Made by a program: the position numbers and the translations under genes
The notes under the pieces: generated by a model
Told to the model about the DNA's origin: nothing
The model's input: the letters and a program-made list of their open reading frames with translations, nothing else
Databases searched by the model: none
Shown here: one piece after another, positions 22,101 through 25,100 of the stretch
Numbering within the stretch: the stretch's first letter is position 1
Layout: every line of letters starts with the position of its first letter
DNA from: Macrostomum lignano
Taxonomy: Eukaryota
Direction: 5' to 3'
DNA length: 64,000 nt
Assembly: GCA_002269645.1 (NCBI GenBank)
Contig: NIVC01000260.1
Span: 186,001 to 250,000, forward strand

Positions 22101-25100
22101 AGAGGGCTCCCACCTCCAGAATTATTAAAGCGCTTACGCTGGACAAAATGTCTAAGTTTTCCTCGGTCAAACGCACCGACGGCACGGCACGTCCACGGAC
22201 AACCCAGGGGAAACGCTTGATGTAATGCTCACTGCGTTTTTCCCAACGAGCCAGCTAGCCCGACCACTCCGGATCACTCGGAGGGAGGTCACGCGCTGGC
22301 TGCCTCTATCATCACGGAGGACCGCATCGTGAGAGCGGCTAATTCCTTCAAGCCTTTCAAAGCCCCAGGACCCGATGGCATTGTACCGGCCCTCCTAAGA
22401 GAGGCGGTTAAATGCCCAGGCTTCCTGCGTAAACTTTGCAGCCTTTTTCGGGCGTGCATCACGCTTGGTTATGTCCCACAGGCATGAACCGAGACAAAGG
22501 TGATTTGTATCCCTAAGCCAGGCCGCCCAGACTACCATTCTATCAAATCCTTCAGACTGATCAGCCTGACCTCCTCCCTGGTCAAGCTGATGGAGAGACT
22601 GGTGCTTTGGCGCCTCCTCTCTGAGGAGCTGAATAACAAACCCCTCAGCGAGAACCAGCACGCTTTTCGGGCGGGTCGCTCCACCGAAAGCGCGCTGCAC
22701 GTCCTGGTCGATAAACTTGAGAAGGCCGTGCTTGGTAACTGCTTCGCTCTGGGGATCTTCCTGGACATCATTGGCGCCTTCGATAACGTCCTCTTGGAGG
22801 CGTTCCGAAAAGCTCTTTGTGAGAGGCAAACGCACTCACATCTCACCAGGTGGATCATGTACATGATCAGCCATCGCACGGCCACCGCCAATCTGCTGAG
22901 CCACCAGAGGACGGTCCCCGTCTGCAAAGGTAGCCCGCAAGGTGGGGTGCTGTCTCCAGTTCTCTGGAACATGGTCATCGATGAGCTCCTTCGGGATGCT
23001 CGGCCTGACCCCATTCTGAAAATAGGATATGCGGATGATGTCACCGCGGTGGCATCTGGTCCGTCCCCTGATACCCTCAGGGACCTTCTTCAGAACTTCA
23101 TCTACGCCGCTGAGCAATGGGCGGATCGCTGTGGTTTAAGGCTCTCTGAGACTAAGACCGCAGCGATCATGTTCACCAGCAGGACCAAGTGGCAGATTCG
23201 GCCGCTCACGCTTTACGGAAGGGAAATCCCCTTCTGCAAGCAGACTAAATGTCTAGGTATTACCCTGGACCACAGGCTGAACTGGTCACCCCACGTTCAA
23301 ACAAAAGCCAAGAAGGCCCTCGCAGTCTTCGCGCAACTGCGCAGGGCTGTCGGCACCACCTGGGGGCTCACCCCCAAGCTCCTCTGGTGGATCTACACTG
23401 CAATGGTTAGGCCCGCTATCTCGTATGGCGGCCTGATCTGGGCTAGCGCCCTGCAGATAAAGACCTGTCTAGAGGCTCTCAGGAGAGCGCAAGGGCGCGC
23501 ATGTCGCATGATCATGAGCGCCCCTCCGTCTGCTCCTTACGATGGCCTCAACGCCTTCCTCAACATTCCTCCGCTGGACATCTTTGTCCACAGGGAAGTG
23601 GCTAAGACTGCCCGCCGTCTAACTGACGCTGGCATTCGAATCCTGCCTCATAGGGCCATGGCTAAGCGCAAGCTTCTGCCCCACGCCGAGCCGGGGCTGT
23701 TGCCCCCAGGACCCCGGGTCCTGCACGTAATGGCGTGGTGAACTATCTGTGCAGTATGAGACTGGTATGGCCTTTATCCCAGCCAGCGATGCTCACACCT
23801 GCCTCCCCTGGCGGGCTGATAGCTCAAGAGACTCTGTCTCCTGATTTTCACCTTGCAAGGCGCACTTCGAAGGGTACTCGTCCCGTGGGTGTTAAGGCAG
23901 GCCCCCTTGGGCCCTGCCGAGCTGATTCGTTGGCGCCGGGTCCTGGTGTGACCATAAACGCACCCTCTAATGTCCCAGTGTAACTCCGTGCTGATGGACG
24001 CTTGGCCAGGGAGTAGTCTGGTCGCTAACGGTTCCCCTTGCGCTTTTGGGTCCCCCGCAGGGTGGTATTTTGCTTTTTGGGGGCCTGCCGCTTGGTTTGG
24101 GGTTGCGGCCTTGCGGCTCTTTGCCTGTGTTCTGCAGGAAGTCCCACCTTTTTACTTCCAGCCAATGGCTTCTAACCGAAGTAACAAACCGGCTGTGGAT
24201 GACACAGTGCCTCCGGCCTCGGCTGGGGCCGTGGACTCCTCGGCCATACCACCTGCTACCATCGGGGACGCCTCGGCGAGACCCGTGGAGCCAACTCTGA
24301 GCGGTGCCTCCGAGAAGACACCTGCTACTCCAGCTGCTAAGAAACGCAGCACCACCTCTGGAGCTGCCCGCCGTCGACTTAACAAGGCGAGGCGGGCCAA
24401 GGAGGGCGGAAGCCAAACCGGTGCCAGGGGCCAACGGCCCGCGGCAGCGGAAGCTTCCCAGTCTGGGGCGGTGGCGGAAGAGGGCCTCGAGCCCACGGAA
24501 GCCCCTGCCCAGGATAGGGAGGCCGATGCAGCCGGGAGGGTGGACAGCCCACCTGAAGAAAGCTCCACTGACCCCCGGGCCTCCTACGCTGATGCGGCAA
24601 AGAGGCAACCGGCGGTTGTCATCCTGGGAAAGGACGCGCGCCTGTCTCCCGATCAGCTGAAGCAGGTGAGAAGTGCCGTTGATGGCCTCCTGTGGAAGCA
24701 AACTCTGAAGGGCACGCCTCTGAACATTCATTCGAATGCGACGAGGGACTCGTGCCTTCTCATTTGGCCCAGTGATGCTGACTCGGGTCGGCGGCTCCTT
24801 GAGCTGCTGCCCGAGCAGAGCTGGGACCTCAACCTAGCCTTCTGCAGAGAGGACGAGCGCCCCCGGACCAAGAGGCATCGAATCTGGGTCCCGGCCAGGA
24901 GCGTTGTTACCTCTGCTGACGAGCTCCGGAAAGGACTGCTAGCAGTCAACCGGGAGCTTCCCGCCGCGGGCCTAGTGGTGCATGACACCCTTAAGCGCAC
25001 CGACGGCACTGGCTTCACAGCCATCCTGGGGCTGTCGGACGCCTGGATGAGGCGTTATCCACACGGCAGCTTCATCAACGTCGGCCTTTGGAAGCTGCGC

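What the first reader, a model, noticed from the sequence alone, without database searches (positions are those of the whole stretch)
23702..23937. HDV-like ribozyme in the 5' UTR of intact retrotransposon B, with an unusual A-U/C-G P1.1
Seen, in the HDV nested double-pseudoknot order: P1 gccccc/gtgggt (G-U first pair, one mismatch), P2 cgaa/ttcg (extended ggcgc/gcgcc), P3 ggg/ccc, 7-nt L3 UACUCGU (HDV: UCCUCGC), J1/4 GUUAA (HDV: GGGCAA), P4 ggcag...ctgcc, and J4/2 C-U-G-A with candidate catalytic C23922. L3 A-C can pair with J1/4 G-U, so P1.1 is C-G plus A-U instead of two C-G pairs. Established: HDV-like ribozymes occur at the 5' ends of R2, RTE, L1Tc and LOA-clade Baggins elements. Inference: this is a new ribozyme subfamily in an apparently active element.
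Basis: partly seen in the sequence, partly recalled or inferred. Interest (0 to 1): 0.9.

Follow-up and report, generated by a model that had tools for sequence, protein, structure and literature searches.

The report
HDV-like ribozyme in flatworm retrotransposon
The 5' untranslated region of an intact LINE-type retrotransposon, most likely from the flatworm Macrostomum lignano, folds as a hepatitis-delta-virus-like self-cleaving RNA. Three related elements keep the same fold through compensating mutations, so it is a real but ordinary new member of a known ribozyme class.

Summary
A strict HDV-type descriptor hits the 64-kb window once, here, against 0.015 hits per shuffled window.

Three homologous 5' UTRs keep the same nested double pseudoknot:
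- the older element A in this window, into which B inserted;
- two external contigs, L001 and L004.

Across the four sequences 93% of pair cells are standard pairs, against 35-45% when partners are slid. Sixteen of 29 pairs change on both sides, spread over P1, P1.1, P2 and P4. L3 U..CGU and the J4/2 cytosine (C23922) are invariant. A covariance model built without element A finds A's decayed copy as its only non-training hit.

The distal P1 is supported by homology: it begins contig L001 and sits 11 nt inside element A. In this copy, however, P1 has a C23706 x U23886 mismatch, and 12 unrelated nt precede G23702.

The 151-nt J1/2 is a conserved multi-helix domain. Long J1/2 regions are known in R2 ribozymes. 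The A-U/C-G P1.1 is real and shared with element A, but P1.1 varies in known members, so "new subfamily" is overstated.

Self-cleavage is untested. Verdict: new member of a known kind.

The parts
23678..23689 (+). Left copy of the 12-bp target-site duplication GCCCCACGCCGA made when element B inserted into element A's ORF2. The right copy is at 29493-29504.
   Evidence: The self-BLAST shows that A's ORF2 resumes at 29494.
23690..23701 (+). 12-nt leader GCCGGGGCUGUU between the DNA junction and the predicted cleavage site. It is not homologous to the 11-nt leader of element A (19109-19119).
   Evidence: Its origin (5' junction filler or 5' transduction) is inferred.
23702..23707 (+). P1 5' strand GCCCCC. 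Predicted scission is 5' of G23702. C23706 is mismatched with U23886.
   Evidence: It is positionally homologous to L001 1-6 (GCCUGC) and to element A 19120-25 (GCACGC).
23708..23858 (+). J1/2 peripheral domain of 151 nt. It starts with a hairpin at 23708-22, followed by a conserved multi-helix domain closed by a helix next to P1 and P2.
   Evidence: The consensus fold has 38 pairs, 10 of them with compensatory change across B, A and L001.
23859..23871 (+). P2 5' strand: outer part GGCGC (23859-63), internal loop ACUU, inner part CGAA (23868-71).
23872..23884 (+). P3 (GGG/CCC) enclosing the 7-nt L3 UACUCGU. U23875, C23879, G23880 and U23881 are invariant in all four homologues. A23876 and C23877 are the P1.1 5' side.
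23885..23890 (+). P1 3' strand GUGGGU.
23891..23895 (+). J1/4 GUUAA. G23891 and U23892 are the P1.1 3' side.
   Evidence: Both P1.1 pairs change on both sides across the homologues.
23896..23918 (+). P4 hairpin: GGCAGG-CCC / GGG-(C)-CCUGCC, loop CCUU.
   Evidence: Seven pairs show compensatory change and 100% of cells are paired.
23919..23925 (+). J4/2 GAGCUGA. C23922 is the candidate general acid/base cytosine (C-U-G-A).
   Evidence: the C and the G two bases later are invariant in the four sequences. The catalytic role is inferred.
23926..23937 (+). P2 3' strand: UUCG (23926-29), loop UUG, GCGCC (23933-37).
24165..29386 (+). Element B coding region. ORF1 is 24165-25685 (506 aa). ORF2 is 25682-29386 (1234 aa) with AP-endonuclease, reverse transcriptase and RNase H domains. 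The two ORFs overlap as AUGA. The element ends at 29492 (...CUGCAGCUAAGUCAA).
19120..19366 (+). Decayed homologous ribozyme of the older element A.
- P1 GCACGC 19120-25 pairs with GCGUGU 19317-22.
- P2 is CACAG 19300-04 with CUGGG 19355-59.
- P2 outer part GUCG 19295-98 with CGAC 19363-66.
- P3 is GGG with CC; one C has been lost.
- L3 is UACCCGU and J1/4 is GUUCAA.
- P4 is 19329-47.
- J4/2 is GGACAGA, with C19351.
   Evidence: The covariance model built without A hits 19299-19360 at 19.1 bits, E 0.015.

Best explanation
Window 23702-23937 encodes an HDV-like (nested double-pseudoknot) self-cleaving ribozyme. It forms the start of the 5' UTR of an intact non-LTR retrotransposon with AP-endonuclease, reverse transcriptase and RNase H domains, most likely from Macrostomum lignano.

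Proposed mechanism:

1. The element is transcribed as part of a longer read-through transcript.
2. P1 (23702-07 with 23885-90), P2, P3, P1.1 and P4 fold. The 151-nt structured J1/2 domain holds the distal P1 strand next to P2.
3. C23922 in J4/2, together with the L3 U23875/G23880 metal site, catalyses scission 5' of G23702.
4. Scission releases element RNA with a defined 5'-OH end for translation and for full-length target-primed reverse transcription.

Shown: the fold, its conservation with compensatory change, the invariant core letters, and its position at the element's 5' end.

Inferred: catalysis, the exact cleavage site, and the biological role. These rest on analogy with the R2, RTE, Baggins and L1Tc ribozymes. 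In this particular copy the C23706 x U23886 mismatch may lower activity.
For: 1. All motif elements are present. The strict descriptor gives one hit in the window against 0.015 expected per shuffled window.

2. Comparison of four homologous 5' UTRs: B, element A in the window, L001 (ORF2 62% aa identity) and L004 (ORF1 42%).
- 93.1% of pair cells are standard pairs, against 35-45% with partners slid by 1-3 columns.
- 16 of 29 pairs change on both sides, against 0-4 when slid.
- 0 of 500 shuffles reach the observed values.
- By helix, pairs with changes on both sides number 2 in P1, 5 in P2, 2 in P1.1 and 7 in P4. The model-made alignment gives similar figures, but there only 2 P2 pairs change on both sides.

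3. L3 U..CGU, the P3 G-C pairs and the J4/2 C-N-G are invariant. These correspond to HDV U20, C24, G25 and C75.

4. A covariance model built from B, L001 and L004 only finds A's decayed copy at 19299-19360. It is the only other hit in 101 kb (E 0.015).

5. P1 sits at the element's 5' end. L001's only perfect partner is nt 1-6, the first bases of the contig. A's GCACGC lies 11 nt inside its junction with a satellite array. B's lies 12 nt inside a junction fixed by a 12-bp target-site duplication.

6. J1/2 is a conserved structured domain. This resembles the P1.2 'pinch' that activates large HDV-like ribozymes (PMC4908430). P1-to-P1' separations of 23 to more than 700 nt are known in R2 (PMC3774820).
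Against: - No Rfam HDV-family model matches, even at E up to 10.
- P1 of this copy has an internal C x U mismatch. P1 mismatches are uncommon and have been linked to weak or absent in vitro cleavage (PMC3774820).
- Better-paired alternative partners for P1' exist inside J1/2, at 23791 and 23796.
- Only four sequences were available, two of them from this window, and the main alignment was made by hand to fit the fold.
- L004 lacks a P1 partner because its contig is 5'-truncated, and its P1.1 has only one pair.
- Both DNA copies carry 11-12 extra nt upstream of the predicted cleavage site.
- Three more distant relatives with ORF2 about 35% identical (L018-L020) show no such motif.
- There are no biochemical or RNA-end data.
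Confidence: 0.8

Rival explanations
1. The family carries a working HDV-like ribozyme, but this copy (B) is crippled by the C23706 x U23886 mismatch in P1. Under this reading its 12-nt leader is 5'-transduced flank from an uncleaved donor transcript.
For: The mismatch is seen. Elements A and L001 have perfect 6-bp P1 helices. P1 mismatches abolished or lowered in vitro cleavage in horseshoe-crab R2 and in other HDV-like ribozymes (PMC3774820). The 12 nt upstream of G23702 lie inside the target-site duplication.
Against: About a quarter of R2 ribozymes have 1-2 P1 mismatches (PMC3774820). The remaining five pairs are four C-G plus one G.U. Element A, whose P1 is perfect, also has an 11-nt leader, so a leader does not imply failed cleavage.
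Confidence: 0.3
2. The fold is real, but P1 forms with an internal partner instead: GCUCAC 23791-96 or CACCUGC 23796-802. Cleavage would then fall about 90-95 nt inside the 5' UTR, or these partners would act as a competing inactive conformer.
For: Both internal partners pair with GUGGGU(G) without mismatch.
Against: The homologous segments of L001 cannot pair with its P1'. CCUGC lies in a conserved J1/2 helix that itself covaries. Cleavage there would discard conserved element sequence. The distal site is the one that covaries.
Confidence: 0.07
3. A conserved but non-catalytic 5' UTR structure, such as an IRES-like or protein-binding domain or part of an internal promoter, that merely has HDV-like topology.
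For: The whole 5' UTR is conserved, including 23940-24164, which lies outside the ribozyme. No Rfam ribozyme model matches. HDV-like ribozymes in R2 are also proposed to serve as IRES and protein-binding sites (PMC6765202).
Against: The invariant letters are exactly those needed for HDV-type catalysis: L3 U..CG, the J4/2 C, and G at position 1 of P1. P1 and P1.1 covary, although they have no role in a plain hairpin scaffold. P1 begins at or near the element's first base in three elements.
Confidence: 0.08
4. A chance match of a low-information motif in G+C-rich sequence.
For: The loose descriptor gives about 27 hits per shuffled window. Many candidate P1 partners exist.
Against: The strict descriptor gives 0.015 hits per shuffled window. 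The fold is kept with 16 compensated pairs in homologues whose P4 sequences are unrelated. The independent covariance model finds element A's copy.
Confidence: 0.02

Closest known systems
R2 retrotransposon ribozymes (HDV-like; Eickbush and Eickbush; PMC3774820)
   Same: - Same helix order, in the sense strand at the start of a non-LTR element's 5' UTR.
- P1 of 6-7 bp, 3-bp P3 and 7-nt L3 with conserved U..CG.
- Variable P4, and occasional P1 mismatches.
- P1 and P1' separated by a long J1/2 (23 to more than 700 nt in R2).
- 5' junctions are variable when cleavage is at the element's end.
   Different: - R2 is site-specific in 28S rDNA and encodes a single ORF with a restriction-like endonuclease. 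It often places its P1 5' strand in the rRNA.
- This element is not in rDNA. It sits in another element's ORF2 and has two ORFs, with AP-endonuclease, RT and RNase H domains in ORF2.
- J1/4 here is 5-6 nt, against 0-2 nt in R2.
Baggins (LOA clade) and RTE-associated HDV-like ribozymes, including the drz-Agam-2 type with a structured J1/2 (Ruminski et al. 2011 as cited in PMC6765202; PMC4908430)
   Same: - An HDV-like ribozyme at the 5' end of APE-type LINEs that are thought to lack their own promoter.
- Cleavage is at the element's 5' end.
- A structured J1/2 (P1.2) domain brings P1 and P2 together.
   Different: - The host is a flatworm.
- The J1/2 domain has several helices and 151 nt, rather than a single P1.2 helix.
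- I could not assign this element to a clade because no reference set was available.
- No Rfam drz-Agam model matched.
L1TcRz of Trypanosoma cruzi L1Tc/ingi elements (PMC3185411, PMC4035085)
   Same: - An HDV-like ribozyme in the first nucleotides of an APE-RT-RNase H LINE, releasing it from co-transcripts.
- P1.1 departs from the two-G-C rule.
   Different: L1TcRz is compact (77 nt) and overlaps an internal promoter. Here the ribozyme spans 236 nt, and no promoter function has been examined.
CPEB3 ribozyme and the HDV genomic and antigenomic ribozymes
   Same: - The core letters U20, C24, G25 and C75 have equivalents here, and the first P1 pair is G.U.
- The CPEB3 P1.1 (one G-C plus U-U, PMC4836649) equals the L004 state (C-G plus U x U).
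   Different: - Those ribozymes are short, with J1/2 of only a few nt.
- Their contexts are intronic or viral.
- HDV P1.1 is two G-C pairs. Here it is C-G plus A-U.

Membership tests
HDV-like self-cleaving ribozymes | Helices P1, P2, P3, P1.1 and P4 in the nested double-pseudoknot order | tested here: met
   All five are present at 23702-23937. 93% of cells are paired and 16 pairs are compensated across four homologues.
HDV-like self-cleaving ribozymes | 3-bp P3 closing a 7-8 nt L3 with the conserved U (first base) and C-G (positions 5-6), equivalent to HDV U20, C24 and G25 | tested here: met
   GGG-UACUCGU-CCC. The U, C, G and U are invariant in B, A, L001 and L004.
HDV-like self-cleaving ribozymes | Cytosine in J4/2 (C-N-R-A) immediately before the P2 3' strand | tested here: met
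   C23922-U-G-A. The C and G are invariant, and the fourth base is A in 3 of 4 sequences. The catalytic role is not testable here.
HDV-like self-cleaving ribozymes | P1 of 6-7 continuous pairs beginning with G1, usually as G.U | tested here: inconclusive
   The G23702.U23890 first pair is present. This copy has only 5 of 6 pairs because of the C23706 x U23886 mismatch. A and L001 have 6 of 6, and two positions covary.
HDV-like self-cleaving ribozymes | P1.1: one or two pairs between L3 positions 2-3 and the first bases of J1/4 | tested here: met
   B and A have C-G plus A-U. L001 has U-A plus C-G. L004 has C-G plus U x U.
HDV-like self-cleaving ribozymes | Mg2+-dependent site-specific self-scission giving 2',3'-cyclic phosphate and 5'-OH ends | not testable with these tools
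   No experiment and no RNA-end data. The only hint is that contig L001 starts exactly at G1.
HDV-like self-cleaving ribozymes | Match to a curated Rfam model of the family (a practical criterion, not a defining one) | tested here: not met
   No hit at gathering score or at E up to 10. This is expected for a 151-nt J1/2 and for pseudoknots that the models cannot score.
Retrotransposon 5'-end processing ribozymes (R2, RTE, Baggins, L1Tc type) | Sense-strand ribozyme at the extreme 5' end of a non-LTR element, upstream of ORF1 | tested here: met
   The element's bounds are fixed by a 12-bp target-site duplication (23678-89 and 29493-504). The ribozyme is at 23702-23937 and the ORF1 AUG is at 24165.
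Retrotransposon 5'-end processing ribozymes (R2, RTE, Baggins, L1Tc type) | Cleavage site coincides with the first base of the element | tested here: inconclusive
   In L001, G1 is the first base of the contig. B and A have non-homologous leaders of 12 and 11 nt between the junction and G1. This fits the variable 5' junctions reported when cleavage is at the element's end (PMC3774820), but it is not proof.

The most novel reading that the evidence does not exclude
A flatworm lineage of HDV-like ribozymes could be regulated rather than constitutive. In this reading a weakened P1.1 (one A-U pair) and a conserved 151-nt multi-helix J1/2 domain make cleavage conditional. Folding of the domain, or its binding by the element's own ORF1 or ORF2 protein, would be needed to pinch P1 against P2, coupling 5'-end processing to RNP assembly. 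The 11-12-nt leaders in A and B would then be traces of templates that were cleaved late or not at all.
Probability: 0.08. Interest if true: 0.65.

Novelty: new member of a known kind. Interest (0 to 1): 0.45.

Why it matters
- It adds a comparatively supported HDV-like ribozyme to a two-ORF LINE with AP-endonuclease, RT and RNase H domains. The host, Macrostomum lignano, is a regeneration and germline model flatworm. I found no paper in the searchable library linking Macrostomum to a ribozyme.
- It gives a concrete, testable 5'-processing mechanism for an apparently active element.
- It is a natural example of a large, conserved J1/2 peripheral domain.
- It provides natural P1.1 variants (C-G/A-U, U-A/C-G, C-G/U x U) that could inform how much P1.1 stability the fold needs.
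- It does not change what is known about the class.

Tried and rejected
1. Rfam scans of the window and of the related loci found no HDV-family hit.

2. Exact-protein look-ups for other copies of B, using ORF2 and the 571-aa ORF1 form, found nothing on record.

3. An ORF1 profile search failed twice. A third run on the central domain gave one short, useless hit.

4. P0004 (54% identity) has no DNA available. L002 and L003 lack the ribozyme region because their contigs start downstream.

5. Core-pattern scans of metagenome, genome and viral collections gave 7, 6 and 24 loci. All are unrelated bacterial or phage sequences without P4, J4/2 or P2, and their number is about what chance predicts.

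6. Distant relatives L018-L020 (ORF2 about 35% identical) had no HDV-like core by descriptor, by L3 pattern or by covariance model. I cannot tell whether the ribozyme is absent there or too diverged.

7. A plain MAFFT alignment of the cores misplaces P4 and J1/4. I replaced it with an N-padded hand alignment and then with a model-made alignment.

8. The alternative P1 partners at 23791, 23796 and 23745 were rejected because they are not conserved in L001. 23796-23802 also lies in a conserved J1/2 helix.

9. I could not assign the element to a clade (LOA, I or other), because no reference set was available and a search for 'DUF4780' gave nothing useful.

10. Ruminski et al. 2011 was not held in the library.
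Full report
**1. What is at the coordinates**

| Element | Coordinates | Sequence or note |
|---|---|---|
| P1 | 23702-07 with 23885-90 | GCCCCC / GUGGGU; G23702.U23890 first pair; C23706 x U23886 mismatch |
| P2 | 23868-71 with 23926-29 | CGAA / UUCG |
| P2 outer part | 23859-63 with 23933-37 | GGCGC / GCGCC |
| P3 | 23872-74 with 23882-84 | GGG / CCC |
| L3 | 23875-81 | UACUCGU |
| J1/4 | 23891-95 | GUUAA |
| P4 | 23896-23918 | 6 + 3 bp, bulged C23912 |
| J4/2 | 23919-25 | GAGCUGA; C23922 is its only C |
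| P1.1 | C23877-G23891, A23876-U23892 | C-G plus A-U |

**2. Is it more than chance?**

Rfam gives no hit for the window at gathering scores, and no HDV-type family at E up to 10 around the site.

A loose structural descriptor is uninformative in this sequence. It gives 29 hits in the window against 27.4 per dinucleotide shuffle.

A strict descriptor adds the HDV core letters (L3 U..CG, C-N-R in J4/2), two Watson-Crick P1.1 pairs, P4 of at least 6 bp, and a G-initiated P1 with at most one mismatch within 250 nt. It hits the window once, here. It gave 6 hits in 400 shuffles, or 0.015 per 64 kb on both strands. I wrote this descriptor after seeing the hit, so it is supportive rather than decisive.

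From this sequence alone the P1 5' strand is ambiguous. Twenty-seven upstream sites pair with GUGGGU with at most one mismatch. Three sites pair with no mismatch, at 23745, 23791 and 23796/23797.

**3. Context**

ORF1 (24165-25685) and ORF2 (25682-29386) are both open. ORF2 has AP-endonuclease, reverse transcriptase and RNase H domains.

UniRef proteins of Macrostomum lignano match at 94-100% identity, so the window is most likely from that flatworm.

Element B is a nested insertion.
- A related, older element A (about 66% nt identity) is split by B.
- A's ORF2 reads on across the gap once B and one copy of a perfect 12-bp duplication are removed. The duplication is GCCCCACGCCGA at 23678-89 and 29493-504.
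- B is therefore 23690-29492. The predicted cleavage site G23702 lies 12 nt inside it.
- A itself sits in a 45-nt satellite array (18186-19108 and 30630-31210), which sets A at 19109-30629.

**4. Relatives**

Exact copies of B were not retrievable. Three homologous 5' UTRs were found.

- **L001.** A Logan contig whose ORF2 is 62% identical.
- **L004.** A Logan contig whose ORF1 is 42% identical.
- **Element A.** Its own 5' UTR lies in this window.

All three place the same fold at the same point:

| Sequence | P1 / P1' | P2 | L3 | J1/4 | P4 | J4/2 |
|---|---|---|---|---|---|---|
| L001 | GCCUGC / GCAGGC | CUCAGA / UCUGAG | UCUCCGU | AGGCAA | UGCGCCCGGCC / GGCCGGGCGUA | GCUGC |
| L004 | 5' strand beyond contig start / GUGGGU | CCUCAGA / UCUGAGG | UUCCCGU | GUUAA | UGCAGCUGG / CUAGCUGCA | GCACUGA |
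| Element A | GCACGC / GCGUGU | CACAG / CUGGG | UACCCGU | GUUCAA | GGCAG / CUGCU | GGACAGA |

In element A one C of P3 has been lost, in keeping with its decayed ORFs.

**5. Pair counts**

I used a hand alignment padded with N (A6).
- 93.1% of 102 pair cells are standard pairs, against 35-45% when 3' partners are slid by 1-3 columns.
- 16 of 29 pairs change on both sides, against 0-4 when slid.
- No shuffle out of 500 reaches the observed values.
- By helix, pairs with changes on both sides number 2 in P1, 5 in P2, 2 in P1.1 and 7 in P4. P3 never varies.
- The three-sequence version without A gives the same picture.

Because a hand alignment leans towards the structure, I repeated the test another way. 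I built a covariance model from B, L001 and L004 only.
- The model finds A's copy at 19299-19360 at 19.1 bits, E 0.015. This is the only non-training hit in 101 kb of window and loci.
- The model-made alignment gives 93.2% paired and 9 compensated pairs out of 21.

The invariant columns are the P3 pairs, L3 U..CGU, and the C and G of J4/2. In HDV these positions form the U20.G25 metal site and the catalytic C75 (PMC4836649; PMC3774820).

**6. Which P1?**

- In L001 the only perfect partner of P1' is nt 1-6. All six pairs are Watson-Crick, and these are the first bases of the contig, which otherwise runs through the element and 540 nt into 3' flank. The chance of that coincidence is about 4^-6.
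- In A, GCACGC at 19120-25 lies 11 nt inside the junction with the satellite. A second GCACGC lies at 19139.
- In B, GCCCCC occupies the homologous place, 15 nt upstream of a GCACG motif shared with A.
- Across the three, positions 3 and 4 of P1 covary (A-U, C-G, U-A). Position 5 is G-C in A and L001 but C x U in B.
- The better-paired internal partners in B are not conserved in L001. CCUGC (23798-802) is part of a J1/2 helix that itself covaries.

This copy carries a mismatch. R2 work links P1 mismatches to weak in vitro cleavage, although about a quarter of R2 ribozymes have one or two (PMC3774820).

**7. J1/2**

The 151 nt between P1 and P2 fold as a closed domain in B and in L001, with z-scores of -2.1 and -2.5. 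The consensus fold for B, A and L001 has 38 pairs, 10 of them compensated. Its closing helix sits next to P1 and P2.

Long J1/2 regions are normal in retrotransposon ribozymes. P1 and P1' are 23 to more than 700 nt apart in R2 (PMC3774820). A helix in J1/2 that pinches P1 against P2 accelerates large HDV-like ribozymes by nearly three orders of magnitude (PMC4908430).

**8. The leaders**

B has 12 nt (GCCGGGGCUGUU) and A has 11 nt (CCGAAGAAGGU) between the DNA junction and G1, and the two leaders are unrelated. A's leader repeats the GAAGGU that follows its P1.

This fits the variable, microhomology-primed 5' junctions described for elements whose RNA is cleaved at its own 5' end (PMC3774820). 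It is also compatible with templates that were not cleaved. I cannot decide between the two.

**9. Mechanism**

Read-through transcription produces a co-transcript. The ribozyme folds, with the J1/2 domain bringing the distal P1 strand to the core. C23922 and the L3 metal site catalyse scission 5' of G23702. The element RNA is released with a defined 5'-OH end for ORF1 translation and full-length reverse transcription.

The fold and its conservation are shown. Catalysis, the cleavage site and the biological role are inferred by analogy with R2, RTE, Baggins and L1Tc (PMC6765202, PMC3185411).

**10. Comparison and novelty**

The RNA meets the structural definition of an HDV-like ribozyme and the positional definition of a retrotransposon 5'-end ribozyme. 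Self-scission is untested, and P1 continuity is not fully met in this copy.

The A-U + C-G P1.1 is real and shared by A and B. Within the family, however, it is also U-A + C-G (L001) and C-G + U x U (L004). The last state equals that of CPEB3 (PMC4836649). Trypanosomatid ribozymes also differ in the number and bases of P1.1 (PMC4035085). So this is a variant within the known range, not a new subfamily.

No paper in the library links Macrostomum with a ribozyme. More distant relatives (L018-L020) show no such motif. I could not assign the element to a clade.

Verdict: a real feature and a new member of a known kind, of moderate interest.

Noticed in passing
window 19109-30629 (element A), 23690-29492 (element B), 18186-19108 and 30630-31210 (satellite): There is a three-level nesting. 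Intact element B is inserted, with a perfect 12-bp target-site duplication, into ORF2 of the decayed related element A. Element A is in turn inserted into a 45-nt tandem satellite array. No target-site duplication is evident for A.
   Followed up: partly
window 23690-23701 and 19109-19119: Unrelated leaders of 12 nt (B) and 11 nt (A) lie between the DNA junction and the predicted ribozyme cleavage site. A's leader contains GAAGGU, which is also the 6 nt that follow its P1 (19126-31). This suggests template switching or microhomology at 5' junction formation, or else 5' transduction from uncleaved transcripts.
   Followed up: partly
window 29420-29492, 30558-30629; L001 5884-5954: The 3' UTRs of B, A and L001 share a block CAGGGG(C/U)UAGCGGAAUGGGCG and the same terminus CUGCAGCUAAGU(C/AAGU)AA, with no poly(A). 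This is a likely recognition element for the reverse transcriptase.
   Followed up: no
window 23940-24164; L001 about 250-547; L004 about 170-436; L003 1-334: The rest of the 5' UTR, downstream of the ribozyme, is also well conserved (for example CCAGGGAGUAGUCUGGUC and GUUUGGGGUUGCGGC). Its function is unknown. L003 carries a tandem duplication of about 105 nt in this region, and B lacks a segment of about 60-130 nt that L001 and L004 have after P2.
   Followed up: no
window 25682-25685: The ORF1 stop and the ORF2 start overlap as AUGA, which suggests termination-reinitiation coupling. In L001 the two ORFs are separated by 24 nt instead.
   Followed up: no
window 23970-24164: An in-frame upstream AUG at 23970 would extend ORF1 by 65 codons into the conserved 5' UTR. 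I did not examine whether it is used.
   Followed up: no
window 17572-17836: A separate 27-nt tandem repeat of 9.8 copies at 97% identity lies just upstream of the 45-nt satellite.
   Followed up: no
window 5311-7494 (+) and 53129-55162 (-): Further long ORFs of 727 and 677 aa that might belong to other mobile elements. They were not examined.
   Followed up: no
L001 1 (Logan ERR14788467 contig): The contig begins exactly at the predicted G1 but reads 540 nt past the element's 3' end into flanking sequence. That pattern would be expected if the run were RNA-seq and the transcript were ribozyme-processed at its 5' end. The type of run could not be checked.
   Followed up: no
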